IMG/VR virus record: IMGVR_UViG_3300028920_000001
Coordinates: 310,001 to 374,000 of that record
Strand: one strand, 5' to 3'
DNA: 64,000 nucleotides
Shown here: piece by piece, positions 1,327-45,940 of the stretch
Position numbering within the stretch: the first letter of the stretch is position 1
Layout: each line of letters starts with the position of its first letter
Notes under the pieces: generated by a model
Database searches by the model: none
What the model saw: the letters and a program-made list of their open reading frames with translations, nothing else
Told to the model about the DNA's origin: nothing
Position numbers and translations under genes: made by a program

Positions 1327-1512
1327 ATGGTTAAGCCTAGTGATGTTGCAAATCGTCTTCGTCAGATCGCAGCCGCGATTGATAATTCGAAATCTCCGAA
1401 ACGGGAACTAGTTGCTGAGGATTTGCAGGAAGTTCTTAGCGTTCTTGAGAATGCGGAGCCCCCGGCAGCAGAGCCCCCGGCAGCAGAGCCCCCGGCACCC
1501 CCGGCCGAATAA
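1327..1512 (+). CDS. Small hypothetical protein, paralog of 7758..8171 N-terminus
   Basis: MVKPSDVANRLRQIAAAIDNSKSPKRELVAEDLQ aligns by eye to MRPSQLAQALRQIATKIENSKAPHRELVAEDIQ; SD AAGGAG. Confidence 0.75.
   Translation: MVKPSDVANRLRQIAAAIDNSKSPKRELVAEDLQEVLSVLENAEPPAAEPPAAEPPAPPAE
1456..1497 (+). repeat. 15-bp tandem repeat (about 3 copies) encoding EPPAA
   Basis: GAGCCCCCGGCAGCA twice plus GAGCCCCCGGCA. Confidence 0.9.
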
Positions 1513-1519
1513 GTCCTGC

Positions 1520-1843
1520 ATGGACTTGGCCAGGATTGCCAGGCGATTGGTCATCGCCAGGCAAATCGCGTATGGCGATGAAGGGACTGGTCTAACTTGG
1601 CAGGCGGATTTCCCTGCGACAACTCCTTGTGAGCACTGCGGGGCAGATGCTCGTCTTGCTTTCACCCTATTGGAAGAGGGTGAGGATGACGAATATATTT
1701 GTAATTTACATGATAATGATCACGAAGAAGGTGGGGAAGGTTTTTGGCTTCATGATGCCGGAGCTTTTGCCTTGTATATTTGTACTGATATAGATTGTGT
1801 AACTAAAACGGGTGGCACTACTACACTTTGGAATCAAGCCTGA
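1520..1843 (+). CDS. Hypothetical protein with N-terminal IAxR motif and Cys/His residues
   Basis: Start reassigned to ATG 1520 (MDLARIARRLVIARQIA) because the longer track ORF overlaps the EPPAA repeat of the upstream gene; CEHC and C/H residues. Confidence 0.7.
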   Translation: MDLARIARRLVIARQIAYGDEGTGLTWQADFPATTPCEHCGADARLAFTLLEEGEDDEYICNLHDNDHEEGGEGFWLHDAGAFALYICTDIDCVTKTGGTTTLWNQA

Positions 1844-2214
1844 TGGATTTTATTAAGATGGCCGCTCGAATTTCAGGGTTAGCTCCTGAATGGTACTCGA
1901 GCGGACGTGAATTTTTAAATAATCAAACACCAATAGATTCTGGTAAAACTCCGGCTGAGGAAAAAGCTGGTACTTCTCTTCCCGGGGATAATCCTGAAGG
2001 CGTCAATCAATACGTAGGAACCAGTCCTCAAAAATTATTAGCTAAACTTCGGACTGAGGACTTGACTTTCGAACAAATAGCCGAAATCGAACATGCTCTT
2101 CAAATTCATTCGGCTTGCACTGGTGATTTTATCGGTACTAAGGCCGAACAAGCATTGGGTTTGAAGCCGCCTAAGCCGCCGGCTCCTAAGCCGCCTCCAT
2201 TTAAACTAACATAA
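1843..2214 (+). CDS. Hypothetical protein, Pro/Lys-rich C-terminus
   Basis: TGATG overlap with previous stop gives MDFIKMAARISG. Confidence 0.7.
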   Translation: MDFIKMAARISGLAPEWYSSGREFLNNQTPIDSGKTPAEEKAGTSLPGDNPEGVNQYVGTSPQKLLAKLRTEDLTFEQIAEIEHALQIHSACTGDFIGTKAEQALGLKPPKPPAPKPPPFKLT

Positions 2215-2317
2215 CTTTTCCGGGGTCATACTCGTCCTCTAGACGTAAGACGTTAGTTGTACCCCAGATCTGACACCTGAGCATTCTCGAACATGTTTTT
2301 AATGTTCGAGAAATAAT

Positions 2318-2989
2318 ATGAAAGGTATTCGAGTATGTCGAAGCTGTGGTCTCCCTAAGGATATAGACCGAGAATACCTTGTTCGGGCCTCTGGTTACGT
2401 TTCTCTGGACTGCGCTGCCTGTGAGCGGGGTAAGGCCCGCCGGAGGCGGAGAGCGCGTTACGGGACCGAAGAAGGGCGACGGAAGATACTTGAAGCCAAT
2501 GCTAAATATCATAAATCTTATTCGAGGAAGGGTCGAATGGCCGGATTGCGTTTAACGGGATTAATTCAGAAATATGCAAATGGTCGAAGAATACTAGACC
2601 CTTATATGAATAATCATTTGGCTAATTTGCTTTGTTCTGGGCTCGAGCTCGTAGGTTGCAGTTTAGATTCAAAGATTGTGAAACTGGTGGAGCAATTATC
2701 TCCTCTCTGTAGCTCTAAGACTGAATTTTATGAAATGGATGGTCTAGAATTTCTAGGTCAAGATGAGCGTAAATATGGATTAATATTTGTTTCTTTACCG
2801 CCATCTGAAGAAGATGGTTGGGCAGACAATTTCGGCTTTCCATTTATTGAACGATGTCAATCACATTTAGAATCGGACGGCCACATCTTATTTTATCTTA
2901 GGAATATATCGGTCTATCAGCCCATTCTTAAGACTAACGGATTTAAGCGACTAGAGCGTCAAGCGGAGATCCATACTTACGGATTGTAG
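2318..2989 (+). CDS. Hypothetical protein: N-terminal CxxC zinc finger, C-terminal degenerate SAM-methyltransferase-like fold
   Basis: CRSC...CAAC; RILDPYM and MDGLEFL...YGLIFVSLP resemble methyltransferase motifs, but the glycine-rich loop is lost. Confidence 0.45.
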   Translation: MKGIRVCRSCGLPKDIDREYLVRASGYVSLDCAACERGKARRRRRARYGTEEGRRKILEANAKYHKSYSRKGRMAGLRLTGLIQKYANGRRILDPYMNNHLANLLCSGLELVGCSLDSKIVKLVEQLSPLCSSKTEFYEMDGLEFLGQDERKYGLIFVSLPPSEEDGWADNFGFPFIERCQSHLESDGHILFYLRNISVYQPILKTNGFKRLERQAEIHTYGL

Positions 2990-2997
2990 ATCTAAAT

Positions 2998-3222
2998 ATG
3001 TCATTCATGATCGATACTCATTGGAAGACTAAAGATGGTCGAATTATTGCCATTAAAGATATGGTTACCCCTCATTTGATCAATGTTTATTGTATGTGTC
3101 GTCTACAAAATGACGATCATAATTTTCCTGAGGAAGTTGCCATTACTGCTGAAATTGAGAAACGGGGACTCAAAAATGAGGTCGATGAATATTTTAAAGT
3201 GTATCGTGTGATGAGATCATGA
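2998..3222 (+). CDS. Small phage hypothetical protein
   Basis: WKTKDGRIIAIKDMVTPHLIN motif typical of small phage ORFs; ATGA-coupled to next gene. Confidence 0.7.
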   Translation: MSFMIDTHWKTKDGRIIAIKDMVTPHLINVYCMCRLQNDDHNFPEEVAITAEIEKRGLKNEVDEYFKVYRVMRS

Positions 3223-3422
3223 AACACGACTGGAAGCGCATTCCGAATCAAATTAAAGGAGGAGGAGTCTATGAATGTTCAGGATGTGGAGAACGGATGA
3301 TTCGTCCCTATCCTATGTCCTATCGGACAGGTAAGCAGATGTCTATGAAGACTTATTTTGATAAACTTGAGATTTCGACTAATTGCACACTTCAAAAAAT
3401 TAAACAAGTGATGAAATCGTGA
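3219..3422 (+). CDS. Small zinc-ribbon-like hypothetical protein
   Basis: HDW...YECSGCG; overlapped start/stop with neighbours. Confidence 0.65.
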   Translation: MKHDWKRIPNQIKGGGVYECSGCGERMIRPYPMSYRTGKQMSMKTYFDKLEISTNCTLQKIKQVMKS

Positions 3423-3625
3423 GTGGAGCAGTTTTAGGAACTCGTGTATTAGTTCCTATGTTTGAATTAACTAGTTGTGCTAAGATTAATCTATCAGTGA
3501 TTAAAAATCGTAGATATTCAAATTATGTTTGTCCTATTTGTGAAGAATTAGTCCCTGATCTTTTGGAGCATGCCGAAAAGATCGGTGATTTTCTTCATGG
3601 TTGGTTAACGATTATGGAGTCATGA
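3419..3625 (+). CDS. Small C2H2-like zinc-finger hypothetical protein
   Basis: CPICEELVPDLLEH...H; GTGA overlap with previous stop. Confidence 0.6.
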   Translation: MSGAVLGTRVLVPMFELTSCAKINLSVIKNRRYSNYVCPICEELVPDLLEHAEKIGDFLHGWLTIMES

Positions 3626-4771: not shown

Positions 4772-4772
4772 G

Positions 4773-5120: not shown

Positions 5121-5185
5121 GTGTGTACCTTACCATACAAACATTACATTCGTCAAGTGTTTTTATCACGTGTAATTTCGGAAAG

Positions 5186-6955
5186 ATGAAGAAAAAAATA
5201 TTAATAATTGTTTTGGGAATAATTATTTGTTCAGTAATTGGTCTCTGGTTTGCGGCTCCATCAATTGCTCGTTGGTATATTTTAGACAAGTATTCCTATA
5301 TTACATCAGTTGGTGAAATTAAGATTAACAAAGATGAAATTGAAATTCAACAAGTTATAGTAGACAAAGATAATATAGAAGGAATTCTAAGAACTGTTGT
5401 TTTTGATTATGACACCACAATTATAATCGAAGGTGGATTCCTACTGGTTGACTTGAATAAAGGCCGTCCTAAAGCTGAAAGTGTTGGGAATGCTAAGAAA
5501 TATACGATTATTGCACGAAAATTAAATGTTAATGTCAAAGTTAAAGATTATTTGGTTAAATTAAGTGATGTTGCTTATAATGACCCTAGTATTCAGGGTG
5601 AAAATGAAGTTTCTTTTAAGGAGGCAACTGCTGAAATTCCAAAATTAGAAAATGTTAAAGCTTACGGTGGTAGTTATGATCTTTTGAGTAAAAAGTTTTT
5701 GCTCGGTTCCGTTAATTTTGATTTCAAATTGCCGATCAAAATTCCAACCGTAGATGCAAAACAATCCGTTTATGCAAATTCAATTTACGTAGATTTGCCT
5801 ACTAAATTAGTTAAGGCAAAAGAAATTTCATTTTCCTCTGAGGATTCAGAATATCCTCACACTACAATTCAAAATTTAGCTGTCACATATTCAAATAAAA
5901 TTGTAGTTACTGCCTCTGAACTCAATACGATGCATCCTTGGTTTCAGAGATCAGAAACAGAACCATTTATATTAAATAAATTCCAAGTCGAAGCGCCTGT
6001 TTCATTAATAAAAGAAAAACGCGGGAAAATTAGTATTTTTCATAATGATATAATAATAGAAATTGATCCTGTTCTTTTTGGTATTAAAACAAATGAAGCA
6101 TCCTGTGCATCATGGCTTGGTTTGACTTCGGGTTTAGAATTTATTGATTATAATGATATTAGCGGGAAATTTGGATTTGAGGTTGCACTAGAACCAGAGC
6201 CTAAGGTGAAAGTAAAAAGCACCTGTGAGGTAAACTGTAAAGCTGACTTTATAGTAGCTTTAAAGAAAGAATTTACTTATACTGCTTATCATGCTGACGG
6301 GGAGCCATTTGAGAGAACAACTGGAAAGCGAACTAAAGAATGGGCTTCATTAGCCGGATCTCCTCCTTGGGTGACGCAAGGTTTTATTTTATTTGAAGAT
6401 CCTTGGTTTGAACGTCATAAAGGCTATCAAAATAGCGCATTTTTGAATTCGCTTAAGGCGAATCTTCGAGCTAAGAAATTCGTGCGCGGTGGTAGTACAA
6501 TCCCAATGCAATTAGCTAAGAATTTATGGCTTGGACGACGTAAGACATTAGATCGGAAATTTCAAGAAATCATTCTAGCAACTGCGCTTGAGGGTTGTTT
6601 TCTCAAGCATGAAATCCTGGAGCTCTATGTAAACGTAGTAGAATTTGGTCCAGATATTTATGGGATCAGAGATGCTGCGTGGCATTATTTTAAAAAAGAT
6701 ACTGGTTTTTTGACACCTTTGGAGGCTTATTATTTAGCCAGAATTCTTCCTCGTCCTCATAGTGCAACCCCGCCTGATAAGGGTGGGCTTGAACATGTAA
6801 AGAAATTATTGGCTAAGATGATTAAAACTCATAATATTCCAAAACACTTGGTGTTAGAGGATGAGATTGCTTTCTATATAGGATATAAAGAAGATGGAGT
6901 TGATACAACAAATACTGAAGACCCGGATTTTTCAGATTCTGACTCAGAAGAGTGA
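5186..6955 (+). CDS. Membrane-anchored biosynthetic peptidoglycan transglycosylase (GT51 domain, no transpeptidase)
   Basis: N-terminal TM MKKKILIIVLGIIICSVIGLWF; GT51 motifs EDPWFERHKG, GGSTIPMQLAKN, RKFQE, KHEILELYVNVVEFG, YLARILPRP. Confidence 0.9.
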   Translation: MKKKILIIVLGIIICSVIGLWFAAPSIARWYILDKYSYITSVGEIKINKDEIEIQQVIVDKDNIEGILRTVVFDYDTTIIIEGGFLLVDLNKGRPKAESVGNAKKYTIIARKLNVNVKVKDYLVKLSDVAYNDPSIQGENEVSFKEATAEIPKLENVKAYGGSYDLLSKKFLLGSVNFDFKLPIKIPTVDAKQSVYANSIYVDLPTKLVKAKEISFSSEDSEYPHTTIQNLAVTYSNKIVVTASELNTMHPWFQRSETEPFILNKFQVEAPVSLIKEKRGKISIFHNDIIIEIDPVLFGIKTNEASCASWLGLTSGLEFIDYNDISGKFGFEVALEPEPKVKVKSTCEVNCKADFIVALKKEFTYTAYHADGEPFERTTGKRTKEWASLAGSPPWVTQGFILFEDPWFERHKGYQNSAFLNSLKANLRAKKFVRGGSTIPMQLAKNLWLGRRKTLDRKFQEIILATALEGCFLKHEILELYVNVVEFGPDIYGIRDAAWHYFKKDTGFLTPLEAYYLARILPRPHSATPPDKGGLEHVKKLLAKMIKTHNIPKHLVLEDEIAFYIGYKEDGVDTTNTEDPDFSDSDSEE

Positions 6956-7256
6956 TCATGTAAGTGAGCATATTTTTACATTTGAACAAGATGGCATTCG
7001 TTCATATTACTTAACTTATGATTCTAATGGATATTCTTTATTTCTTGAATCTCAAAAAATAGCATATTATCCAATCTTTAATTTAATTGATGCTGCAATT
7101 GTTGATCAAATTGTATCTGACATTTTAAATGTTGAGTTGGTAGCTCGTATTATGGAAGTGGATCGTTCTTTTCAGGGATGGAGTGTGTCTGAAAATGTTG
7201 GGATCGGTATAGCGAATCCTCGTGGTTTAAAACAACTTCGTCTTAAATCAGATTAG
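6894..7256 (+). CDS. Hypothetical protein (start uncertain)
   Basis: ORF track; overlaps the upstream gene end. Confidence 0.5.
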   Translation: MELIQQILKTRIFQILTQKSDHVSEHIFTFEQDGIRSYYLTYDSNGYSLFLESQKIAYYPIFNLIDAAIVDQIVSDILNVELVARIMEVDRSFQGWSVSENVGIGIANPRGLKQLRLKSD

Positions 7257-7689
7257 GTTCTGATTCTTCCATTTTGACGTGTTGAAGATAGCCTGCCAGT
7301 TGTAATCCCTGTACTATTTTGTTTAATGATTCATTCTCTGATTCAAATTCACGAATAAAATTTATAATTTCTTCATTAGTATGTCCAACATTGATGTCGA
7401 TTTGAATGTAATTATTTGTGTTAAAGTCATCTAGAGTATTCCCTAGACTGCCTTTGTCTCCCAGGGCTGCTTCAAGTTCATCATATTGGTCTTGGGTCAA
7501 ATTCATAGGGGGATAAAAGAAAACAGAATAAATCTCACCTGTTGGAGGTTCATTTCCATTTGGAGTGAGACCTTGATCATCTATTATTTCCCAATCTTCA
7601 TATTTTAGAGATAAATTTTTAAGGACATCTTCTGGACTCTTAACTGGAATTGTTTCAGCTATCTTTTTAGCAATTCGACTTAAATTCAT
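7243..7689 (-). CDS. Acidic hypothetical protein with N-terminal IAxKIA motif
   Basis: MNLSRIAKKIAE start; 148 aa. Confidence 0.7.
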   Translation of the reverse strand: MNLSRIAKKIAETIPVKSPEDVLKNLSLKYEDWEIIDDQGLTPNGNEPPTGEIYSVFFYPPMNLTQDQYDELEAALGDKGSLGNTLDDFNTNNYIQIDINVGHTNEEIINFIREFESENESLNKIVQGLQLAGYLQHVKMEESEPNLI

Positions 7690-7702
7690 AATCCAAAATA
7701 CA

Positions 7703-7716: not shown

Positions 7717-7757
7717 CTGGATTAAAAGTTAAGCTTTCTGGAGTAAGGAGATTTATT

Positions 7758-8171
7758 ATGCGTCCATCTCAATTAGCTCAGGCTCTTCGTCAGATTGCCA
7801 CTAAGATTGAGAATTCTAAGGCTCCTCATCGTGAATTAGTAGCAGAAGATATTCAAGGAATTCTTCAAGAGCTTGAAGAACCATCTCTAACTCGTGAAGA
7901 AGTAGCTAAGATGTGTCCTTCTTGTGCTGAAAAGATGGCCTCTATGGGCATTACTAAAATTTCGTCTGAAGCTATTATGCGAGCAATTGTTTCAGTTGAT
8001 CTGCCTAAGGGTTGGACTGAGGAATCAGCTAAAAAGTGGTGGAATACAGCAACTAAAGGTGCTGAACATAAGAAAACCAAATGTATGGAAAAGATTAAGG
8101 GAAAGGTTTCCAATCCCGGAGCTTTTTGCAATTGGTTAGCTGGTTTAGCTGATTATAAGCCGAGTAAATAA
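7758..8171 (+). CDS. Hypothetical protein, probable virion-internal protein
   Basis: SD AAGGAG; N-terminus paralogous to 1327..1512; CPSC and KCMEKI...PGAFCNWL segments. Confidence 0.75.
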   Translation: MRPSQLAQALRQIATKIENSKAPHRELVAEDIQGILQELEEPSLTREEVAKMCPSCAEKMASMGITKISSEAIMRAIVSVDLPKGWTEESAKKWWNTATKGAEHKKTKCMEKIKGKVSNPGAFCNWLAGLADYKPSK

Positions 8172-8218
8172 TTGTAAATTATTGGGTGTATTAGGTACGT
8201 AAGTACAAATCACCCACT

Positions 8219-9189: not shown

Positions 9190-9774
9190 ATGAAATCAAG
9201 GCAAGCAAGTATTAATGATATGCTGAAAAAATTCCTTGATTTATTAGATAACTCTGTTGAAAAGTATATATCTTCAAATCGGGAAAACATTGAAAGAAAA
9301 TTACGGTATAAGGCTCAGCAACATAAAGTTGAGCTTTCAGATGAACAAGTCAATAATGTACTCGAGTATTTAGGTGATTGGATAGATAAAAATTTGCAAT
9401 TGCCGGATGATCAAATTCAGAGATTAGTTAATTCCCTGGCTGAACCAGCTAAATTACGTGATTTAATCGAAAAAGCTTTGAATGATGAAATTTATACTTT
9501 GAAACAAGAACGGGGCATGGTATCTCAAGCGTCTTTATGCTATATGGCAGCTCGGATTGCTGGAGCAGAAGGAACTGAACCTGATAAAGAGAAATTTAGA
9601 CAATCTCTTAAGACATTGGATGAATTAGCAGATGATGTTATGTCTGCAGCAGAAAATATAAAATCATTGGTTGAATACGCTAAAAGGCGCGCTCCGCAGG
9701 CTAAATGGCAGGAATTTATTGATGGTAATATAGCTAAATATACTGAATTGAAAAAAATAATGCAAATTAACTAA
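9190..9774 (+). CDS. Helical hypothetical protein with RQAS and MAARIAG motifs
   Basis: 194 aa; internal SQASLCYMAARIAG. Confidence 0.7.
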   Translation: MKSRQASINDMLKKFLDLLDNSVEKYISSNRENIERKLRYKAQQHKVELSDEQVNNVLEYLGDWIDKNLQLPDDQIQRLVNSLAEPAKLRDLIEKALNDEIYTLKQERGMVSQASLCYMAARIAGAEGTEPDKEKFRQSLKTLDELADDVMSAAENIKSLVEYAKRRAPQAKWQEFIDGNIAKYTELKKIMQIN

Positions 9775-10417: not shown

Positions 10418-10609
10418 ATGAATTTATCTAAAATAGCAATTCGAATTGCAGGTTTGACTCAGCCTCTATCTGAACGTCCTGACTACGGGAGTCGTGAGTC
10501 TTCTCGAGGCTGTCCTAAATGCGGATTTGTTAAGGGAAATAATGGTGAAATCTATGATCCTACTTATCCCTGTCCTGGTTGTGGTAATGGTGGTGTAAAA
10601 TCTGGTTGA
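10418..10609 (+). CDS. Small zinc-ribbon protein with N-terminal IAIRIA motif
   Basis: Start reassigned to MNLSKIAIRIAG; CPKCG...CPGCG; TATAAT 19 nt upstream. Confidence 0.7.
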   Translation: MNLSKIAIRIAGLTQPLSERPDYGSRESSRGCPKCGFVKGNNGEIYDPTYPCPGCGNGGVKSG

Positions 10610-11714: not shown

Positions 11715-12089
11715 GTGGCGGTCCTATTGATGCAGTATAGGACCGCCACTGGGGCAACTATATATCTTCAGGAGGAGCTTTCTACATCGAGACTTCATAC
11801 TGAAAATATAAAGCATTTAATTGTTAGAGCTTATGATTTAATTAACGCCAGTGAGAATCGAGACCACTTTTTTGCTGTGGCTGGCGATATCATTTATTCA
11901 CTTCCTCGAGAAGTTGAAGCGCTGGAACGTTCACTTAATGCTAGCGCAATGGCGGTCAATAAAATTGATTATGAAGAATTGCGCCAAGCCTTAAGACCTG
12001 ATAAAATAGATGAGTTGGAGCGAGTTTTAGATGATGTCCGACTCAAAATCCCAAGACGTACAGGTAAACTCCCAGTCATTGAAGAATAA
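11715..12089 (+). CDS. Hypothetical helical protein
   Basis: ORF track, 124 aa. Confidence 0.65.
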   Translation: MAVLLMQYRTATGATIYLQEELSTSRLHTENIKHLIVRAYDLINASENRDHFFAVAGDIIYSLPREVEALERSLNASAMAVNKIDYEELRQALRPDKIDELERVLDDVRLKIPRRTGKLPVIEE

Positions 12090-13533: not shown

Positions 13534-14808
13534 ATGAGTGACGATATTCATGGCTTTATTTTAAGTGAAGCCGCACTTTATTCATTTAAAGCTCAGGATG
13601 TATTTCCTGACTTAATTAGTTTCTGTGCTGCTATTCCGGATCATTTACGACCGTTATTTTTAATTCCAATTCAACTTGATACTAATTCTGATGTTCCCTA
13701 CGGGAATTTGGCTTCCGTGGCTTCTAGAGTGGCTTCATATACTTATATGGATGGTATGCACAATGCTACTCCAGAAGGGGAACTATTTAGCTATCAAACC
13801 TTTGTTTATGACGAAGATGAACCACCTTTAATTCCTAGTTCTGAACCTGGTTCAATTCACAATAAAGATACTGGTCCAACTAAAACGCATCATCAAGAGG
13901 ATCCTGAGGAGGACGAGAATATTCAAGTTCCAACTGATACTTCATATATGTCAGATGTGGATATGACCCAATATTGGGATTATCCATATCGAAGTGAAGA
14001 ACAACCTCGTCACTCTTCAATTATGATTGCTGCTCGTTCTTTAGCTCGGAGAGTTGCCCTTAAAACTGAACAGCTTGAGACTAAGGCTCCGGAAGAAATT
14101 CAAGATCGGGCTGAGACTTGTTTGGTCAATTTTATTTCTTATGATAAGAGGGGTCGAGTTTTTACTTTTGAAGTAAATTGTGGAAATGTTCCTCGGACGG
14201 TTAGAGCAGCCATGTCAGATATTGATCATGTTGCTTTGACGTGTAATTGTCCGTTTTGGCAATACGGTGGTCCTGAATTTCATGCTAAAGAGAACCGTTA
14301 TCTTTTAGGTCCTCCTCGGGGAACTGCTACTCCTCCTGATATTCGAGATCCAGATAGAAAATTTTTTCTTTGTAAACATGCTTATGCTGTTTTAGCTCGC
14401 CTTGATCATTTTGTAGAACGAATTGTTGAGGAGAATTGGGACTTGGATGATGCAGAATTACTAGAAATAATTGATAAAGAATGGGATAAACTTGAGCCTA
14501 CTGCTCAGATTGATCTTGATGAAGCTATAGAGGAAGAACCCGAAATAGAGGAAATAGAAGAAGAGCCTGAGGGGGCTGAAGAAGAGCCTGAAGAGGCTGA
14601 GGCTGAGGTTGAAGAAGAGTCTGAAGAGCCTGAGGTTGAAGAAGAGCCTGAGGAGGCTGAGGCTGAAGAGCCTGAGGAGGCTGAGGAGGCTGAGCCTGAG
14701 GAGGCTGAGGCTGAGGCTGAAGAGCCTGAGGAGGCTGAGGCTGAAGAGCCTGAGGAGGCTGAGGCTGAAGAGCCTGAGGCTGAAGAAGAGGAAGAAAAAG
14801 AAAAATAG
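13534..14808 (+). CDS. SWIM zinc-finger protein with long acidic tail
   Basis: LTCNCPFW...FLCKHAYAVL (CxC...CxH); C-terminal ~95 aa of E/A/P repeats. Confidence 0.75.
   Translation: MSDDIHGFILSEAALYSFKAQDVFPDLISFCAAIPDHLRPLFLIPIQLDTNSDVPYGNLASVASRVASYTYMDGMHNATPEGELFSYQTFVYDEDEPPLIPSSEPGSIHNKDTGPTKTHHQEDPEEDENIQVPTDTSYMSDVDMTQYWDYPYRSEEQPRHSSIMIAARSLARRVALKTEQLETKAPEEIQDRAETCLVNFISYDKRGRVFTFEVNCGNVPRTVRAAMSDIDHVALTCNCPFWQYGGPEFHAKENRYLLGPPRGTATPPDIRDPDRKFFLCKHAYAVLARLDHFVERIVEENWDLDDAELLEIIDKEWDKLEPTAQIDLDEAIEEEPEIEEIEEEPEGAEEEPEEAEAEVEEESEEPEVEEEPEEAEAEEPEEAEEAEPEEAEAEAEEPEEAEAEEPEEAEAEEPEAEEEEEKEK
14560..14795 (+). repeat. Low-complexity tandem repeat encoding (EEPEEAEA)n
   Basis: Repeated GAAGAGCCTGAGGAGGCTGAGGCT units. 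Confidence 0.85.
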
Positions 14809-34289: not shown

Positions 34290-34291
34290 AT

Positions 34292-34957: not shown

Positions 34958-36102
34958 AAATATTATTTGTTTTTGCCCCTTATTTGTTTTTGAGGGGTCT
35001 TTTTGACCATGGTAAAAAATATGATTTTGTAAATTTAAGGGACAATCCTAGAGGATTAACAGGTTCTGAAGTCTCTTGTTTCCAAATTGCTAAGCAATTT
35101 GCTCTAAAGGATCATGATGTTGCAATATCTACTACATTGAATTCAAATAGAATAAATATCTGGGAAAATGTCAATATTATACCTATGGATAATGTAGATG
35201 ACATTAAGAAAATTGTGAATGGTGATTGGGATGTTGTTTATTCTTGGAATGAAGTCAATGTTTTAAGATATGTAAATCCGAATTCACTTAGGATGATAAA
35301 TCTTCAAATTAATGACTTGGATCATGGTGAAGATGGATATGATGATTATGTAGATATATATACTAGTCCATCTGAATCTCACAAGTCTGTTATCGGCAAA
35401 TTAGCTCCTAATCTTAGCAAATGGGAAGTTGTGCCAAATGGATGTTATTTGGATATATATGACAAATTAAATCAAAACATAATAGATGGGAGAATAATTT
35501 ATGCATCTTCTCCAGATAGGGGTCTTCATTGGTTACTTCAAATATGGCCTTCAATTCGTAAGGCAGTTCCAGAAGCTCATTTAAAAATTTTTTATGAGAT
35601 TCAATCTTGGATAAATCGATTTAATGATATAGATCCAATATCGGTAACTAAAATAATGGCTCAACTTTCATGTCGAGCACGTTATATTAAAGAGGCTTTT
35701 AGAAGATTTGGATCAAATTCTGGAATTGAAGTTATTGGTTCTGTCAGTCGGAATCAGATTGCTAAAGAATTTGCTCAAGCTCAAATTTTAGCTTATCCTT
35801 GCGATACTGTTAGTTATACTGAAGGATTTTCAGTTACTTTGATGGAAGCGTGTGCTTCTAAAACTGTTCCAATCACTACTGATGTGGATGCTCTTGGAGA
35901 GATTTATGGATCTGCAGTTCCCATGGTGCATGCACCAATTGAGCCCAATTTGGATGAATATCGGGAGTTGGTAATTAGAGCGCTTACTGATTATAATTTT
36001 CGTCAGGAAGTGATCTCTAAAGCTAGGCAATTAGCAGAGCAGTATACCTGGGATAAGGTTGCTGATAAGGTGTTAGATATCATAGAAAAGAGACGAAAAT
36101 GA
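34954..36102 (+). CDS. GT4-like glycosyltransferase
   Basis: GLTGSE; YASSPDRGL; EGFSVTLMEACA; YTWDKVA. Confidence 0.9.
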   Translation: MKILFVFAPYLFLRGLFDHGKKYDFVNLRDNPRGLTGSEVSCFQIAKQFALKDHDVAISTTLNSNRINIWENVNIIPMDNVDDIKKIVNGDWDVVYSWNEVNVLRYVNPNSLRMINLQINDLDHGEDGYDDYVDIYTSPSESHKSVIGKLAPNLSKWEVVPNGCYLDIYDKLNQNIIDGRIIYASSPDRGLHWLLQIWPSIRKAVPEAHLKIFYEIQSWINRFNDIDPISVTKIMAQLSCRARYIKEAFRRFGSNSGIEVIGSVSRNQIAKEFAQAQILAYPCDTVSYTEGFSVTLMEACASKTVPITTDVDALGEIYGSAVPMVHAPIEPNLDEYRELVIRALTDYNFRQEVISKARQLAEQYTWDKVADKVLDIIEKRRK

Positions 36103-36566
36103 ATCATGATGAATATACAACAGCTGTGGATCAGGGTAAATGGCCATCCGATTCATTAGTTCCTTTAGATGATCCTTTCATTAATGAAAATGGGGTTATT
36201 CAGAATCTTCTTCTTAAGCCTGCAAATAGTTTTACTATCATTCATAGTAAACCATCTAGTATTCGTGCCAATCACTACCATAAGACTGATTGGCATTATT
36301 CATATGTAGTGAGTGGAAGAATTATTTATTTTGAGCGCAAAGTTGGCGATACTATTGTTCCAGAACCACAGTTTTATGAATCTGGAAAAATGTTTTTTAC
36401 TCCACCGATGGTGGAACATGTTATGTATTTTCCTGAACAAACAACTTTTGTGACTATGGCCAAAAATATACGTTCTCATGAAAGTCATGAATCTGATGTT
36501 GTCAGAGTTTCATTTTTAGATTTGGATCAAATACGAGATTTGTGTTGGAAAGCTTTGAGGAAATAA
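36099..36566 (+). CDS. Cupin-fold NDP-sugar epimerase/isomerase-like protein
   Basis: IRANHYHKTDWHYSYVVSG...FTPPMVEH. Confidence 0.8.
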   Translation: MNHDEYTTAVDQGKWPSDSLVPLDDPFINENGVIQNLLLKPANSFTIIHSKPSSIRANHYHKTDWHYSYVVSGRIIYFERKVGDTIVPEPQFYESGKMFFTPPMVEHVMYFPEQTTFVTMAKNIRSHESHESDVVRVSFLDLDQIRDLCWKALRK

Positions 36567-36567
36567 T

Positions 36568-37878
36568 ATGACTCTTCAAAGGATTCGGAAAGACTGTAGG
36601 CTGTGTGGAAGTGAAGAGCTTGAGAAAACTTTTGATTTAGAGGATTCTCCTCCAGCAAATGAATTTGTTACAGAATCAGAAATAGACAAGTCTCAGGAGA
36701 AGTTTCCACTCGGATTATGGGAATGTCAAAATTGTGGTCATGTTCAGTTACCTGTAGTAGTAAGCCCTGATCAGCTATTTCGTAATTATGTTTATGTATC
36801 TGGTACTAGCCCAGTTTTTGTAGATCATTTTCGTAAGTATGCCGAATCTTTAACTAATCGGGCCAATTTTCGAAAAGGAGACTGGGTAATTGATATTGGA
36901 AGTAATGATGGTACTCTTCTTAAATTTTTTAAAGAGAAGGGCGCTCGAGTTTTAGGTGTTGATCCGGCTAGAGATATTGCAGCTAAGGCAACAGTAGAAG
37001 GTATTGAAACTATTCCGGAATTTTTTACTAGTGAACTGGCTCAGAAAATTAGTGAAGAGCGAGATATTAGGACAACTAAGGCTAATGGAGCTAGATTCAT
37101 AACAGCGAATAATGTGTTTGCCCATGCTGATGATTTAGGTGATATTGTTAATGGAGTAAAGAAATTACTTGATACTAATGGGATATTTGTTTTTGAGGTT
37201 TCTTATTTAGTTGATGTGATAGAGAAGAATTTATTTGATACCATTTATCATGAGCATTTATCTTATCATCACTTAGGACCACTTATTAAATTTATGTTAT
37301 CTTATAATATGATGGTTAGCCATGCCGAGCGTATTGATACTCATGGCGGATCTTTACGGGTTTACTGTACGAGTTTGTTTAGTTCTGCTTTTGGAAAACC
37401 GTCGAGTTTAGTCCAAGAAATTCTTGAACACGAATTTAAGATGAACTTAAAAGGAAGTGGCTTTGATGATGTATTTAATGGATTTATGCCATTACATTCT
37501 TTGAAATCGAAGATTGATTCACTTCGTGATCAATTACTAAATAGATTGAAAGAGATTAAGTCAAGAGGAAAATCTATAGTAGTTTTTGGAGCTCCAGCTA
37601 AAGCCACTACTTTAATGCATCATTTTAAATTGGGTAAAGAAACCATTGATTTTGTGGTGGACGACTCTCCACTTAAACAGGGGTTATTTACTCCTGGAAC
37701 TCATATTCCTGTGGTATCGTCAAGTACCTTGTATGAAAAGAAGCCAGACTATTGTGTGATTTTGGCTTGGAATTTTGCAGAGCCAATTATGAAAAATCAT
37801 CAGGCTTATTTAGAACAAGGTGGAAAATTTATTGTACCAATACCAGAGTTAAAAGAATATGGAACTCCTAAAAACTGA
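36568..37878 (+). CDS. NDP-hexose C-methyltransferase (Zn-binding N-terminus, SAM domain, C-terminal domain)
   Basis: CRLCG...PPANEF...CQNCGHVQL; IDIGSNDGTLL; NNVFAH; FDTIYHEHLSY; HGGSLR; GAPAKATT; ILAWNFAEPI. Confidence 0.9.
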   Translation: MTLQRIRKDCRLCGSEELEKTFDLEDSPPANEFVTESEIDKSQEKFPLGLWECQNCGHVQLPVVVSPDQLFRNYVYVSGTSPVFVDHFRKYAESLTNRANFRKGDWVIDIGSNDGTLLKFFKEKGARVLGVDPARDIAAKATVEGIETIPEFFTSELAQKISEERDIRTTKANGARFITANNVFAHADDLGDIVNGVKKLLDTNGIFVFEVSYLVDVIEKNLFDTIYHEHLSYHHLGPLIKFMLSYNMMVSHAERIDTHGGSLRVYCTSLFSSAFGKPSSLVQEILEHEFKMNLKGSGFDDVFNGFMPLHSLKSKIDSLRDQLLNRLKEIKSRGKSIVVFGAPAKATTLMHHFKLGKETIDFVVDDSPLKQGLFTPGTHIPVVSSSTLYEKKPDYCVILAWNFAEPIMKNHQAYLEQGGKFIVPIPELKEYGTPKN

Positions 37879-39771: not shown

Positions 39772-39772
39772 A

Positions 39773-40937: not shown

Positions 40938-40997
40938 ATAAAGATGTACAAGGATCTAGCTGTGATTTACGCAATTTTTAATTATTTGGTTTGACTG

Positions 40998-41408
40998 ATG
41001 AACCGGCAAGCATCCATTCAAAAAGCATTCAGTTTAGCTAATATTGCTATGCGGATCGTTGAAGCTTCAGAAAAGCGGACCGCATACATTAAAAAAGAGA
41101 AAGGTAAATGGTGCGTAAAATCACCGAATAATCCTAAATGGTCTGGAGGATGTTACGATACTAAGGCTGAAGCCGAAAAGCGGCTTGGTCAAGTTGAGAT
41201 GTTTAAGCATATGAAGAAAGGGGCTGAAGAAGTAACGGATCCAGGTCCAGGTCGGAGACGTCAGCAGAGATTAAGGCGTCCGGATTGTCCTTGGGCTGAT
41301 GTTGAATTTGATGAAGAATTTAATCCTGGCCCCGGTGGACCAAGAGGGCGTGGATTAGGAGATGTAAATATTGAAGAGTTGGATATCGAAATTGAAGATG
41401 ATGATTAA
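40998..41408 (+). CDS. Probable head-associated protein with propeptide-like N-terminus
   Basis: IAMRIV...KRTA followed by YIKKEKGKWCVKS...GCYDTKAEAEKRL, a module recurrent in phage head-morphogenesis genes. Confidence 0.6.
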   Translation: MNRQASIQKAFSLANIAMRIVEASEKRTAYIKKEKGKWCVKSPNNPKWSGGCYDTKAEAEKRLGQVEMFKHMKKGAEEVTDPGPGRRRQQRLRRPDCPWADVEFDEEFNPGPGGPRGRGLGDVNIEELDIEIEDDD

Positions 41409-42301: not shown

Positions 42302-42347
42302 GTCCTCTTTAAGTGTTACAGTTTCTTTTTTAATGTAAATTCCTTTT

Positions 42348-43802
42348 ATGAAGAAGGAATATTACGAAGCCCATAAAGAAGAGATTAAACGTAAGGCTCG
42401 AGAACGATATAAGAAAAATCGGGCACGAATTTTAAATCAAAAGAATGAACGATACACTAGAGAGCGAGATAATATTTTAACTCGTAGGCGTAAAGCTTGG
42501 AAAGAAAACTCTGAAATTAAGAAAAACCATGATAAATACCACCGTCAGCTCAAAAATAAATGTTATGAGATTTTAGGTGGTAAATGTGTCCGATGTGGAG
42601 AGGCTAATCATGATTTACTGTCCATTGATCATATAAACGAAGATGGGGCTCAAGAAAGAAAGTCTCTTACTTTAGTTAAACTTCGGTCTAATATTGTAAA
42701 TGGTGTAAATCGGGAGAATTATCAACTTCTTTGTTTCAATTGCAATCTGAAGAAGCACCTGAATTATGAAGAACGATTTTTATTGATTGGGAGAGATAAA
42801 TACTGTCCTACTTGTCGCTTGTCTAAGGATGAATCTCAATTCAAGAAAGATAAATTGTATGAAGATGGTTATTATTATGAATGTCGATTTTGTGTTCAGT
42901 CTAGAGAGTTAGAAGTTAAAATTAAGGTATTTAATTTATTAGGAAAATCTCAATGTAATTGCGGCATCAGTGACGTTGATGTTCTTACTGTTGATCATAT
43001 TGAAAAGATTGGGAAGAAAAGAAAATGGCTAGGTAGTTCTTTATATAGAAAGATTTTACAAGGAGCTTTGAATGCTCAGAATTATCAAGTATTATGTTTG
43101 AACTGCAACATTTTGAAGAGTCTTCAAAATGGAGATAAACAGCATGCGACTAATCTGAAAATTGGTTCTTATATTACTGAGGTTGATTTTGAAGAACCTG
43201 TGACCAAAACCACTTTGGAGTATGACTTAGTTAATTTTGATTTTGAAGATATTATAATTCAGAATATTGATAGGGAAAAATCAGTCGTATTTTTAGAAAA
43301 TTATCACTACATTGGATTTGGAAGATCTGGATTTGGTGCGTATGGGGTATTCTTAGGTGATAAATTAATTGCAGTTGTTAAATTCGCTCCCCCGGTTCGA
43401 CAAAAAGTGGCTAGTTCTATTGGATATGAATCTAATAAAATTTTTGAATTAGATCGATTTTGTATCCATCCTGCCTACCAGAAGAAAAACTTTGCCTCTT
43501 TTCTTTTGTCTCGAGTTGTTAAATTGGTAAAACGAGATTATTCAGACATCAAATGTTTGGTTTCATTTGCTGATCCACGGTATGGGCATGATGGGACAAT
43601 TTATAAGGCTGCGAATTGGAAGTTCGTGAGGAAAACTGCTTATAGTTATGCTTATGAGAATGGGAAAGGTGAAGAGATAAATAAGAAAACTCTCTATAAT
43701 TGGTCAAAGGTTCGAGGGATGACTGAGAAAGAAGGGGTGGAACAACTATGTTTGAAGAAGATTAAGTTACCTCGAAAATTGAAATTTGTGTATGAATTGT
43801 AA
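42348..43802 (+). CDS. Tandem HNH-type endonuclease fused to Mom-like GNAT-fold domain
   Basis: Two C..C...(S/T)(I/V)DHI...YQ(L/V)LC.NCN units; C-terminal YHYIG, ELDRFCIHP, SFADP, GTIYKAANW. Confidence 0.75.
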   Translation: MKKEYYEAHKEEIKRKARERYKKNRARILNQKNERYTRERDNILTRRRKAWKENSEIKKNHDKYHRQLKNKCYEILGGKCVRCGEANHDLLSIDHINEDGAQERKSLTLVKLRSNIVNGVNRENYQLLCFNCNLKKHLNYEERFLLIGRDKYCPTCRLSKDESQFKKDKLYEDGYYYECRFCVQSRELEVKIKVFNLLGKSQCNCGISDVDVLTVDHIEKIGKKRKWLGSSLYRKILQGALNAQNYQVLCLNCNILKSLQNGDKQHATNLKIGSYITEVDFEEPVTKTTLEYDLVNFDFEDIIIQNIDREKSVVFLENYHYIGFGRSGFGAYGVFLGDKLIAVVKFAPPVRQKVASSIGYESNKIFELDRFCIHPAYQKKNFASFLLSRVVKLVKRDYSDIKCLVSFADPRYGHDGTIYKAANWKFVRKTAYSYAYENGKGEEINKKTLYNWSKVRGMTEKEGVEQLCLKKIKLPRKLKFVYEL

Positions 43803-43813
43803 ACTTTTCAATA

Positions 43814-44677: not shown

Positions 44678-44728
44678 TGCTATAATGGACTCTTGAATTA
44701 TTATGGCGTACCTTGGATGAGGTTAGTT

Positions 44729-44908
44729 ATGAAATATACTTGGGCAATTGCATTAGCTTTAGTTTTGGTTGGCTGTGGATCTGATGACGACGATGCGGGA
44801 AGTGCTGGCGCCGCTGGTGCATCCGAAGTCGGTGTATCTGGAGCTGCAGGTTCTGAAGTTGGCGGAGCTGCGGGCCAACAGGTTGGTGGGGAAGCTGGGA
44901 CTGAGTAA
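44729..44908 (+). CDS. Small lipoprotein with Gly/Ala-rich tail
   Basis: SD GAGG; MKYTWAIALALVLVGC lipobox, then GSDDDDAGSAGAAGA. Confidence 0.8.
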   Translation: MKYTWAIALALVLVGCGSDDDDAGSAGAAGASEVGVSGAAGSEVGGAAGQQVGGEAGTE

Positions 44909-44924
44909 ATTGTAATCTTATCCT

Positions 44925-45194
44925 GTGGAAGCAGGATACGATTGGCAACAAATTCAACCGCCTGTGGGATCAGGCGGTATTTATCGCATTTATCAATGTG
45001 CCAGGACAGGTATATATGGGTATGTAAGAGGAAGCGGTATTAATCCAAAGCGAAAAGTGAAGAAAATTATTCCATATTTATGCTCTGCTAAGGGATGTAA
45101 GCGGAAAGCTACGGCCAGAAAACCAGGGTTGATTGGTCCTCGATATATTTGGGTATGTGAAGAACATCTACATGTTGACTTTGCTAGAAGGTGA
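44925..45194 (+). CDS. Small Cys-containing basic hypothetical protein
   Basis: YQCARTG; CSAKGC...CEEH. Confidence 0.6.
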   Translation: MEAGYDWQQIQPPVGSGGIYRIYQCARTGIYGYVRGSGINPKRKVKKIIPYLCSAKGCKRKATARKPGLIGPRYIWVCEEHLHVDFARR

Positions 45195-45197
45195 CTT

Positions 45198-45494
45198 GTG
45201 GATGATATTAAAAATCAGATTAAGGAACGTATCGAAAGGGCCTTACGAACAACTTTGATGGAGCATGATGATCATGCTGAGGAACGAATAACGAATACGC
45301 TTATGCAGTATTTGCAAAGTCTTGATCATGTTAGTGCTCCTCAAGTTGAGTTGGTTGAAGAATCGGATGAAATGAAGATAGTTCGAGAAATTATGGAAGA
45401 AATTAAAGATAAATATGAATTTAAAGTGTCAATGCAATTACCAACGTATATAGATCATATTATTTTTGAGGTCAAAGTAGGGGATAAGGATTAA
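45198..45494 (+). CDS. Hypothetical protein
   Basis: ORF track, 98 aa. Confidence 0.6.
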   Translation: MDDIKNQIKERIERALRTTLMEHDDHAEERITNTLMQYLQSLDHVSAPQVELVEESDEMKIVREIMEEIKDKYEFKVSMQLPTYIDHIIFEVKVGDKD

Positions 45495-45517
45495 GCCCTT
45501 CATAGCACCATATTGAT

Positions 45518-45940
45518 ATGGATTTTCGATCCATTGCTATGCGCGTAGCTTCTGGGACGACGGCGGCTAGGAAAAAGTCTAAGAAGTCAAAAAAATCCCG
45601 GAAAACTAAGAAAACTCGAACTAAAAAGACTAAGCCTCGCACCTCCAAACCGGTGAAACCGGTTGAGCCGGATCCTCCTGAAGAAACTGAGGATGAAGAG
45701 GAATCAACAGATAGTATTTTGAAGCCGAAGACTGAATATTCTTGTCAGCTTCAAATATCTATAATTGCTGATTTTGAAGGTGAAGTTGATCAGGGTAAAT
45801 TAAAGAGAAAGCTTAAGACCGAATCTATCAATGCTGTGAAAGCAGGGGTGGCTACTACCGCTCGTGAATATAGATTGGAGGCCACTCAGATTACGGTTCA
45901 ACCAATCAGTATCGAATGTGCGGTTAATTCGATTGAATGA
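45518..45940 (+). CDS. Lys-rich protein with N-terminal IAMRVA motif
   Basis: MDFRSIAMRVAS then KKSKKSKKSRKTKKTRTKK. Confidence 0.7.
   Translation: MDFRSIAMRVASGTTAARKKSKKSKKSRKTKKTRTKKTKPRTSKPVKPVEPDPPEETEDEEESTDSILKPKTEYSCQLQISIIADFEGEVDQGKLKRKLKTESINAVKAGVATTAREYRLEATQITVQPISIECAVNSIE

What the first reader, a model, noticed from the sequence alone, without database searches (positions are those of the whole stretch)
1327..45940. Recurrent N-terminal IAxRIA-like helix on many unrelated proteins: possible capsid-targeting or propeptide signal
Seen: MDLARIARRL (1520), MDFIKMAARIS (1843), MNLSRIAKKIA (7689, minus strand), MNLSKIAIRIA (10418), MDFRSIAMRVA (45518), SLANIAMRIV...KRTA (40998), LRQIA(A/T)(A/K)I (1327, 7758); internal SLCYMAARIA (9190), NLASVASRVA and RSLARRVA (13534). 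RQAS occurs at 9190 and 40998. Established: T4 internal proteins share an N-terminal capsid-targeting sequence removed by the prohead protease. Inference: these genes encode head-internal or ejected proteins recruited by a common leader, possibly cleaved after an R-x-A-type site.
Basis: partly seen in the sequence, partly recalled or inferred. Interest (0 to 1): 0.65.

Follow-up and report, generated by a model that had tools for sequence, protein, structure and literature searches.

The report
Shared N-terminal leader on phage proteins
About two dozen otherwise unrelated small proteins of a 427-kb phage start with the same 11-residue helix, which most likely sends them into the assembling capsid and ends in the head protease's cutting site, though neither step has been shown.

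Summary
The window is part of a complete 426,960-bp huge-phage genome. The motif M-[DN]-[LF]-x-[KR]-I-A-x-[RK]-[IV]-A occurs 13 times in six-frame translation (0.008 expected), always at an ORF start. A profile brings the count to about 20-25 genes, seven of them in tandem just downstream of the major capsid gene, immediately upstream of the window.

Codons vary synonymously, so selection acts on the peptide. With the leader removed, only 1 of 210 protein pairs is similar. The bodies are mostly small, acidic orphans. Relatives with 85-93% identical capsid protein carry the leader on other proteins. In one 374-aa family with more than 250 homologues it is conserved and modelled as a free helix (residues 3-12) before a loop.

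R-[IVT]-A is concentrated only in the portal-to-capsid block (16 sites against 3.0 expected, P 1.4e-7; next best window P 0.087). It sits at conserved positions in the scaffold, the protease tail and the capsid N-arm.

Best reading, confidence about 0.5: a T4-CTS-like targeting propeptide, in a phage with a different protease and motif. Packaging and cleavage are untested. "LRQIA" (1327, 7758) is a separate 40-residue module.

The parts
1520..1843 (+). Leader-bearing gene, 107 aa. The leader is residues 1-11; the body is acidic and has a Cys-rich motif.
   Evidence: profile score 15.9. The ATG follows the stop of the upstream gene at 1512.
1843..2214 (+). Leader-bearing gene, 123 aa (variant with M at position 6 and S at position 11).
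   Evidence: 18.3 bits. No Pfam family.
7243..7689 (-). Leader-bearing gene, 148 aa, acidic (pI about 4.05), an orphan.
   Evidence: 19.5 bits; no homologue among 5.8 billion proteins.
10418..10609 (+). Leader-bearing gene, 63 aa. The leader is followed by a copy of the capsid-protein N-arm segment (QPL-x-ER-x-DY) and a zinc ribbon.
   Evidence: 22.3 bits; residues 9-26 align to capsid residues 31-48, E 0.004 within the proteome. Orthologues in relatives keep both parts.
40998..41408 (+). Gene with the leader core offset to residues 12-21 and an R-T-A at residues 27-29, 136 aa.
   Evidence: Orthologues in relatives L109 and L130 carry the canonical core.
45518..45940 (+). Leader-bearing gene, 140 aa. 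It is the one strongly basic body (pI 9.5, Lys/Arg-rich stretch).
   Evidence: (18.8 bits).
9190..9774 (+). 194-aa protein with an internal leader-like core at about residues 113-123.
   Evidence: core at residue 119; rank 26 of 129,408 positions.
13534..14808 (+). SWIM zinc-finger protein, 424 aa, with an internal leader-like segment at residues 58-67 and a poly-Glu tail.
   Evidence: Pfam SWIM. Orthologues L114 and L117 keep the motif at the same place; in L114 it is expanded to a repeat.
1327..1512 (+). Member of a second, distinct N-terminal module of about 40 aa containing L-R-Q-I-A-x-x-I.
   Evidence: 60% identity over 40 aa to the protein at 7758; cluster of 5.
7758..8171 (+). Member of the second N-terminal module, 137 aa.
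   Evidence: In paralogue g104655 the module precedes a PHROG DNA-binding domain.

Best explanation
The leader is a modular, clade-specific capsid-targeting propeptide.

Structure (sequence shown; the helix is supported by a model for one family, otherwise inferred):
- Residue 2 (D or N) caps a three-turn amphipathic helix spanning residues 3-12.
- The hydrophobic face is L/F3, I6, A7, I10, A11. K/R5 and R/K9 flank it.

Proposed mechanism (inferred):
- The helix docks the protein onto an interior component of the assembling procapsid, either the scaffold or the inner face or N-arm of the capsid protein.
- Its last three residues, R-I/V-A, are a recognition site of the phage head-maturation protease.
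- The protease would remove the 11-residue leader and leave the body free inside the head. The bodies are mostly small, acidic and fast-evolving. From there they could be ejected with the DNA.

Shown here:
- the motif, its N-terminal position and its statistics
- selection at the peptide level
- unrelated bodies
- conservation across the clade
- the leader modelled as a free helix in one family
- R-[IVT]-A concentrated only in the head-assembly module and at conserved positions of the scaffold, protease and capsid N-arm

Inferred, not shown: packaging, cleavage, the identity of the receptor, and the function of the bodies.
For: 1. The motif is overwhelmingly non-random and N-terminal.

2. Synonymous codon variation and unconserved upstream DNA place the selection on the peptide.

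3. The bodies are unrelated. After the leader is removed, 1 of 210 pairs has Z > 4. One body is a Pfam DUF5661 domain that starts after the leader. In relatives one body is a NIF/FCP1-like phosphatase.

4. Head-module context:
- The order is large terminase, portal, a 744-aa protein carrying the motif at residues 65-76, the protease, a scaffold-like protein, a decoration-like protein and the capsid protein.
- Seven leader genes follow directly, with overlapping starts and stops.

5. The 374-aa leader family:
- It lies in a conserved block upstream of the terminase.
- It has more than 250 homologues with a conserved leader: A7 in 84/88, L/F3 in 76/85.
- AlphaFold2 models residues 3-12 as a free helix, then a loop (13-43), then a confident helical bundle.

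6. R-[IVT]-A enrichment:
- 17 sites against 2.75 expected in the head module (P 6e-9).
- Controls are flat: A[IVT]R 0 against 3.3, K[IVT]A 4 against 4.1, R[IVT]S 2 against 3.6.
- For R[IV]A, none of 5000 residue shuffles reached the observed count.
- In a genome-wide scan of 648 windows, the portal-to-capsid block is the only peak: 16 against 3.0, P 1.4e-7, next best P 0.087. The tail-like and fibre blocks are at expectation.
- There are no sites in the terminase or the decoration-like protein.

7. The sites are conserved in relatives:
- the scaffold helix E-R-[VI]-A-R
- R-[TV]-A at the end of the scaffold helical domain
- R-T-A-S at the start of the conserved scaffold C-terminal tail
- the protease C-terminal tail W-K-G-[RK]-I-A-S-[ILV]-[AS]
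- protease residue 40, R-[IV]-A-K
- the capsid N-arm, R-[IL]-A-A-S

8. Parallels in the literature:
- The T4 CTS is a 10-residue N-terminal propeptide on unrelated internal proteins. It combines targeting with a protease site, and the T4 internal-protein repertoire is poorly conserved (PMC9026906).
- The giant-phage proteases of SPN3US and phiKZ cut at a short motif and auto-cleave their C-termini. SPN3US paralogues share identical N-terminal propeptides (PMC5694885).
Against: - There are no virion or N-terminal proteomic data, and no cultured member of the clade is known.
- Many leader genes lie in regions of small genes of mixed orientation (106-120 kb, 235-245 kb) that look like accessory or early regions.
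- Leader genes are not enriched next to the capsid gene in relatives.
- The bodies are acidic (median pI 4.4), unlike the basic T4 internal proteins, and would sit uneasily beside packed DNA.
- The motif also occurs internally and at C-termini.
- Nothing is conserved after residue 12, so cleavage has to be assumed inside the helix.
- The R-x-A enrichment could equally reflect shared docking helices rather than cleavage sites.
- The complex prediction (capsid protein plus scaffold plus leader) gave no verdict.
- The enrichment was measured in one genome only.
Confidence: 0.5

Rival explanations
1. The leader is a generic docking or oligomerisation helix that is unrelated to the capsid. It would tether many accessory proteins to one hub, a phage or host protein or each other, for example by forming Ala-rich helix bundles. 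It is not a propeptide.
For: - It is an amphipathic helix with invariant small residues at A7 and A11.
- In relatives it can expand to (I-A-S-R)n repeats, and it occurs internally and C-terminally.
- Many carriers sit in accessory-gene regions.
- The spacing of hydrophobic residues matches that of microcompartment encapsulation peptides (own knowledge).
Against: This reading does not explain why R-[IVT]-A is concentrated only in the head-assembly module and at conserved positions of the scaffold, protease tail and capsid N-arm. It also does not explain the seven-gene block behind the capsid gene.
Confidence: 0.2
2. The leader is a membrane-targeting amphipathic helix, like the short terminal helices of MinD, FtsA or SepF. 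It would bring phage accessory proteins to the host inner membrane.
For: - High hydrophobic moment: 0.64, the 97th percentile of N-termini in this genome.
- Net positive charge and a length of about three turns.
Against: - The conservation is residue-specific (A7 18/18, I6 16/18) rather than physicochemical.
- The hydrophobic face is made of small or medium residues with few aromatics.
- The bodies are strongly acidic, which disfavours anionic membranes.
- It does not account for the head-module signal.
Confidence: 0.08
3. The leader is an N-terminal degradation or timing tag read by a host or phage AAA+ protease or adaptor. It would limit the lifetime of accessory proteins.
For: - It is an exposed N-terminal peptide followed by a loop.
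- There is a loose resemblance to ClpX N-terminal recognition motifs of the form polar-hydrophobic-x-basic-hydrophobic (own knowledge, not tested).
Against: - The conserved stretch is longer and more specific than known degrons.
- Internal and C-terminal copies exist, and the motif is present in structural head proteins.
Confidence: 0.07
4. The leader has no function of its own. It would be a relic of a tandemly duplicated gene family whose bodies diverged beyond recognition, or a gene-start cassette spread by recombination.
For: - Tandem arrays exist (305.7-308.6 kb and 106.4-107.8 kb).
- One pair of neighbours still shows body similarity (Z 7.1).
Against: - The codons are scrambled while the peptide is kept.
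- The leader is conserved in a family of more than 250 members down to 41% identity, while the linker after it varies in length.
- It is fused to unrelated known domains: DUF5661 and a NIF phosphatase.
Confidence: 0.05

Closest known systems
Phage T4 capsid targeting sequence (CTS) of internal proteins IPI, IPII, IPIII and Alt
   Same: - A 10-11-residue N-terminal peptide shared by unrelated proteins.
- Targeting and a protease site combined in one short peptide.
- A fast-evolving cargo repertoire.
- A protease that itself has terminal propeptides (PMC9026906).
   Different: - The sequence differs. T4 ends in I-A-E and is cut after Glu; here the candidate site is R-I/V-A.
- No Peptidase_S77 (gp21-type) protease was detected. 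The protease here matches PHROG 18299 and the proteases of Tunturi_5 and phage G.
- The capsid protein is a small phage-G-like HK97-type protein with a separate scaffold, not the gp23/gp22 core.
- The cargo bodies are acidic, not basic.
- Packaging and cleavage are not shown here.
Propeptides and A/S/G-x-E cleavage motif of the giant phages phiKZ, 201phi2-1 and SPN3US
   Same: - A short three-residue cleavage motif recurs in many head and ejection proteins.
- The protease auto-cleaves at its C-terminus.
- Paralogous ejection proteins share identical N-terminal propeptides (PMC5694885).
   Different: - Those propeptides are mostly long (up to about 125 residues).
- Those proteases are T4-like and cut after Glu.
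- There is no sequence relation to the motif here.
C-terminal capsid-targeting tail of HK97-type prohead proteases, and C-terminal capsid-binding helices of scaffolds (P22, 80alpha/SaPI1)
   Same: - A short terminal peptide takes a protein into the procapsid by binding the capsid protein or its N-arm (own knowledge).
- Here the protease ends in a clade-conserved tail containing [RK]-I-A-S, the same four residues as leader positions 5-8.
   Different: The leader is N-terminal and is spread over about 20 non-structural proteins. Binding was not demonstrated.
Encapsulation peptides of bacterial microcompartments and cargo-loading peptides of encapsulins
   Same: - A short modular tag, followed by a linker, loads diverse cargo into a protein shell.
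- Microcompartment peptides are amphipathic helices with the same spacing of hydrophobic residues. Encapsulin shells have the HK97 fold (own knowledge).
   Different: - No sequence similarity.
- Those shells are cellular organelles, and their tags are not removed by a protease.
- Encapsulin tags are usually C-terminal and extended.

Membership tests
T4-type capsid targeting sequence system | A short (about 10 aa) N-terminal peptide shared by otherwise unrelated proteins of one phage | tested here: met
T4-type capsid targeting sequence system | The peptide ends in the prohead-protease cleavage motif (L/I-x-E in T4) | tested here: not met
   No Glu or other residue is conserved at or after the end of the leader. 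A different candidate motif, R-I/V-A, ends the leader and is enriched in head proteins.
T4-type capsid targeting sequence system | gp21-type prohead protease (Pfam Peptidase_S77) and a gp22-type scaffolding core | tested here: inconclusive
   There is no PF03420 match in the genome, but the control genomes did not match either. The protease present matches PHROG 18299 and the Tunturi_5 and phage G proteases.
T4-type capsid targeting sequence system | Carriers are packaged in the head and the peptide is removed | not testable with these tools
   The genome is a metagenomic assembly. No proteomes exist and no RNA runs were found.
Prohead-protease substrate set defined by a short cleavage motif (as in phiKZ/SPN3US) | The motif recurs preferentially in head-interior proteins and at conserved positions, including the protease's own terminus | tested here: met
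   - R-[IVT]-A: 17 sites against 2.75 expected in the head module, and the only peak in the genome.
- Conserved in the scaffold, protease tail, portal and 744-aa protein of relatives.
Prohead-protease substrate set defined by a short cleavage motif (as in phiKZ/SPN3US) | Cleavage at the motif demonstrated by mass spectrometry or N-terminal sequencing | not testable with these tools
   No data available.
Microcompartment encapsulation peptide / encapsulin cargo-loading peptide | Co-occurrence with microcompartment shell or encapsulin genes, and binding to the shell protein | tested here: not met
   The only shell protein in context is a phage major capsid protein within a terminase-portal-protease module. 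Binding was not demonstrated (no verdict).

The most novel reading that the evidence does not exclude
A whole clade of huge phages from sediment, wetland and hot-spring samples uses a two-part code to load capsids. The code is an 11-residue N-terminal helix that ends in an R-I/V-A protease site, read by a non-T4, HK97-type head protease.

With it the phages would load a large, hypervariable set of small acidic effector proteins, together with occasional enzymes such as a phosphatase, for co-injection with the DNA. The leader may have arisen by copying the capsid protein's own N-arm helix, as the w10418 family still shows.

This would be an independent invention of the T4 CTS principle, and a ready-made cargo tag for such phages.
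Probability: 0.35. Interest if true: 0.75.

Novelty: new variant of a known kind. Interest (0 to 1): 0.62.

Why it matters
- If the leader is a capsid-loading propeptide, it marks out from sequence alone which of the hundreds of orphan genes in uncultured huge phages encode packaged, probably injected, proteins. Those are prime candidates for anti-defence or host-takeover factors.
- It would give a first predicted specificity (R-[IVT]-A) for the phage-G-like family of head proteases.
- It would show that the CTS strategy evolved outside the T4 lineage.
- It would supply a short tag for loading foreign proteins into such capsids.
- Even if the capsid reading is wrong, a strictly conserved 11-residue address label on more than 20 unrelated proteins points to an unknown hub interaction worth finding.

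Tried and rejected
- **Complex prediction.** Capsid-protein alignment plus scaffold-like protein plus leader residues 1-40. Scores were ipSAE 0.12 and 0.07, which gives no verdict and is evidence neither way.
- **Fold search.** Foldseek of the 374-aa family model against the PDB found no match with E <= 0.001.
- **Capsid-protein model.** Mean pLDDT was only 54. It was used only to note predicted N-arm helices at residues 12-23 and 26-35.
- **Family scans of leader bodies.** Pfam and PHROGs found only DUF5661 in this genome, a NIF phosphatase in a relative, and a DNA-binding PHROG on a member of the second module.
- **Big-database searches.** The w7689 protein has no homologues. The w10418 protein has only two near-identical hits.
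- **Peptidase_S77 search of the genome.** No hit, but the controls were silent too.
- **Proline cap after the helix.** Seen in 7 of 18 leaders, against a 31% background, so not significant.
- **Capsid N-arm as a general template for the leader.** The N-arm windows rank only 120-336 of 129,408 positions with the leader matrix. This is kept as a lead for the w10418 family only.
- **Leader genes next to the capsid gene in 79 related loci.** Only 12 profile hits in 939 kb, so no enrichment.
- **More distant relatives.** LR745208.1, Tunturi_5 and phage G lack N-terminal leaders of this form.
- **Promoter and terminator scan of the head block.** At or below the shuffle expectation.
- **Sequencing runs.** No RNA runs hold the locus.
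- **Literature.** No paper contains the motif strings. The phage G multi-omics paper has nothing on processing.
- **DNA/RNA-level element.** Rejected because of synonymous codon variation.


Full report
**What the window is.** The window is G000:C1:310001-374000 of a single 426,960-bp contig with 40% G+C. IMG/VR classes the record as a complete virus with direct terminal repeats. It is a huge tailed phage.
- A PHROG major-head-protein match (1.3e-43) lies at genome 304457-305350.
- That protein is 73.5% identical to the capsid protein of uncultured phage LR745208.1, 45% to Tunturiibacter phage Tunturi_5 and 36% to Bacillus phage G gp27.
- The nearest sequencing run holding the locus is a marine sediment metagenome.

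**Checking the observation.**
- Across the whole genome, the strict pattern M-[DN]-[LF]-x-[RKSN]-[IM]-A-x-[RK]-[IVL] matches 13 times in six-frame translation. Every match sits at an ATG at the very start of an open frame. From amino-acid composition, 0.0013 matches are expected in the proteome and 0.008 in six frames.
- A 13-column profile finds 15 hits above its inclusion threshold plus several weaker N-terminal ones, including GTG starts and variants such as K-I-A-A-R-M-T-E. The family is therefore about 20-25 genes.
- The six-residue core occurs 22 times against 1.3 expected, and 15 of those lie in the first 24 residues.
- Unsupervised clustering of all N-terminal 28-mers makes this by far the largest cluster.
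- Positions 1-11 are conserved (D/N2, L/F3, A7 and R/K9 in 18 of 18). Conservation stops abruptly at position 12.

**Peptide, not nucleic acid.** Arg, Ser and Ala codons differ freely among the copies, and the 45 bases upstream are unrelated. Selection is therefore on the peptide, not on a DNA or RNA element.

**Unrelated bodies.**
- With the leader cut off, only one of 210 pairs, two neighbouring genes, keeps significant similarity.
- BLAST matches between carriers are confined to the first 10-14 residues.
- The bodies are 63-383 residues long and mostly very acidic. Their median pI is 4.4 and 71% fall below pI 5, against 20% genome-wide.
- They are essentially orphans.
- One body is a DUF5661 domain that begins after the leader. 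In a relative the leader precedes a NIF/FCP1-like phosphatase.
- The leader is therefore a portable module.

**A second module.** The 'LRQIA' proteins at 1327 and 7758 belong to a different N-terminal module of about 40 residues. It has at least five copies, one of them fused to a DNA-binding PHROG domain. It shares only the L-x-x-I-A-x-x-I spacing with the leader.

**Where the genes are.** The head module lies just upstream of the window. In order, it contains:
- the large terminase
- the portal
- a 744-aa protein that carries the motif at residues 65-76 and a second conserved leader-like helix near residue 513
- two small proteins
- a 919-aa head-maturation protease interrupted by an intein
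- a 422-aa scaffold-like protein
- a decoration-like protein
- the capsid protein
- a 181-aa protein with the motif at residue 66
- six more leader genes packed start-to-stop (306302-308591)

Other carriers are at window 1520, 1843, 7689(-), 10418, 40998 and 45518. Further carriers sit at genome 106-108 kb, 119.8 kb, 235-245 kb and 286 kb. Several of these neighbourhoods consist of small genes in mixed orientation and look like accessory regions.

**Relatives.**
- An exact DNA-pattern scan of IMG/VR and pattern searches of five related genomes found the same leader at the N-termini of other proteins. These phages have capsid proteins 85-93% identical to this one. The core pattern gave 3-12 hits per genome against 0-1 for the reversed control.
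- In relatives the motif also occurs at C-termini. In one gene it is expanded to (I-A-S-R)n.
- LR745208.1, Tunturi_5 and phage G do not show it.
- In relatives the leader genes are not concentrated beside the capsid gene.

**The 374-aa family.**
- The carrier at 286060 has more than 250 homologues on huge-phage contigs.
- It lies in a conserved block upstream of the terminase.
- Its leader is conserved down to about 41% identity: A7 in 84/88, L/F3 in 76/85, R/K9 in 68/89.
- A Gly/Ser-rich linker of variable length follows, and then an invariant R-T-A-G-K-I-E-F segment.
- AlphaFold2 with 90 sequences (mean pLDDT 73) models residues 3-12 as a free helix, 13-43 as a loop, and 44-167 as a confident helical bundle.
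- The fold has no PDB match.

**The R-x-A test.**
- In the head module there are 7 R-I-A sites against 1.0 expected. R-[IV]-A gives 13 against 2.2, and none of 5000 residue shuffles reached that count.
- R-[IVT]-A gives 17 against 2.75 (P 6e-9). Controls are flat: A-[IVT]-R 0 against 3.3, K-[IVT]-A 4 against 4.1, R-[IVT]-S 2 against 3.6, R-[IVT]-G 1 against 2.9.
- A genome-wide scan was run over 648 windows of consecutive genes, with the first 30 residues of every protein dropped. The portal-to-capsid block is the only peak (16 against 3.0, P 1.4e-7). The next best window has P 0.087. The tail-like block (1 against 2.5) and the collagen-fibre block (3 against 3.1) are unremarkable.
- The terminase and the decoration-like protein have none.
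- The sites are conserved in relatives:
  - the scaffold helix E-R-[VI]-A-R
  - an R-[TV]-A at the junction of the scaffold's helical domain and its acidic linker
  - R-T-A-S at the start of the conserved scaffold C-terminal tail
  - the protease C-terminal tail W-K-G-[RK]-I-A-S-[ILV]-[AS] in about 27 loci
  - protease residue 40, R-[IV]-A-K
  - portal residue 289
  - the 744-aa protein at residues 513 and 632
  - the capsid N-arm, G-R-x-R-[IL]-A-A-S
- Positions at domain boundaries and termini are what one expects of maturation cleavage sites. They could also be shared docking helices.

**A side lead.** The 63-aa protein at 10418 continues from the leader into a copy of the capsid N-arm (Q-P-L-x-E-R-x-D-Y), with E 0.004 within the proteome. 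A 55-aa ORF at genome 73397-73564(-) copies capsid residues 39-60. With the leader scoring matrix, the capsid N-arm itself ranks only 120-336 of about 129,000 positions. 'N-arm mimicry' is therefore a hypothesis for that family, not for the leader in general.

**Interpretation.** The best-supported model has four parts:
- the leader is a T4-CTS-like propeptide
- it is an N-capped three-turn amphipathic helix that docks cargo to the inside of the procapsid
- it ends in the site of the head protease
- the same short site serves to process the scaffold, the protease and perhaps the capsid N-arm

The parallels with T4 are close. T4 uses a 10-residue CTS in which targeting and processing residues are interleaved. 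Its internal-protein repertoire is poorly conserved, and its protease has terminal propeptides (PMC9026906). SPN3US and phiKZ use a three-residue motif, auto-cleave the protease C-terminus, and have identical propeptides on paralogues (PMC5694885).

It is not the T4 system. The motif differs, no Peptidase_S77 protease was detected, and the capsid protein and scaffold are of the phage-G type.

Packaging, cleavage and the receptor are all inferred. The single complex prediction allowed gave no verdict.

Weaknesses of the model:
- the scattered genomic positions of many carriers
- the acidic bodies
- internal and C-terminal copies of the motif
- the enrichment test was run in one genome only

I put this model at about 0.5. 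The rivals are:
- a capsid-unrelated docking or oligomerisation helix (0.2)
- a membrane-binding helix (0.08)
- a degradation tag (0.07)
- a functionless relic of paralogy (0.05)

**Novelty.** No paper in the library contains the motif. I know of no description of a CTS-like leader or an R-x-A protease motif for phage-G-like or other non-T4 huge phages. I rate it a new variant of a known kind.

Noticed in passing
L002:9465-12224 (genome 299465-302224, about 8-10.5 kb upstream of the window): The head-maturation protease gene is interrupted by an intein with a LAGLIDADG homing endonuclease (Pfam Hint, Intein_splicing and LAGLIDADG_3 matches across residues ~184-565). Relatives have intein-free versions of 507-565 aa. 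In one relative (L138) the portal gene carries an intein instead.
   Followed up: partly
window 20217-27434 and 27438-29783: There is a 2405-aa protein made almost entirely of collagen Gly-X-Y repeats (Pfam Collagen, 1092 bits), followed by a 781-aa collagen-repeat protein. They explain the 55-57% G+C island in a genome that is otherwise 37-40% G+C. They are presumably giant fibres.
   Followed up: partly
window 12031-13518 and 42348-43802: Two paralogous Mom-like DNA-modification domains (45% identical) are each fused to an HNH or Vsr-type nuclease region. In a relative (L138) a Mom-like gene stands at the head of the conserved block upstream of the terminase. Each window copy lies 1-2 genes downstream of a leader-bearing gene.
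   Followed up: partly
window 10418-10609; genome 73397-73564 (-): Two small ORFs copy parts of the capsid protein N-terminal arm: residues 31-48 and 39-60. They may be decoys or assembly modulators.
   Followed up: partly
window 1327-1512, 7758-8171; genome 79714(-), 104655, 111172: There is a second recurrent N-terminal module of about 40 aa (P-S-Q-L-x-x-x-L-R-Q-I-A-x-x-I-x-x-S-K-x-P-x-R-E/D) on different bodies. One body is a PHROG DNA-binding protein.
   Followed up: partly
L018:3822 (-) / L113; L114: In relatives the leader core is expanded into a tandem (I-A-S-R)n peptide repeat. One case is at the N-terminus of a 53-aa ORF. The other is inside the orthologue of the SWIM protein at window 13534.
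   Followed up: no
window 5123-6955: A 610-aa protein carries a penicillin-binding-protein-type transglycosylase domain (Pfam Transgly, 2e-42) behind an N-terminal hydrophobic segment. This is unusual phage cargo.
   Followed up: no
window 31878-37878: A cluster of glycosyltransferases (GT2 with TPR and GT4; GT1) and a C-methyltransferase follows the collagen-like fibre genes. This suggests glycosylated fibres.
   Followed up: no
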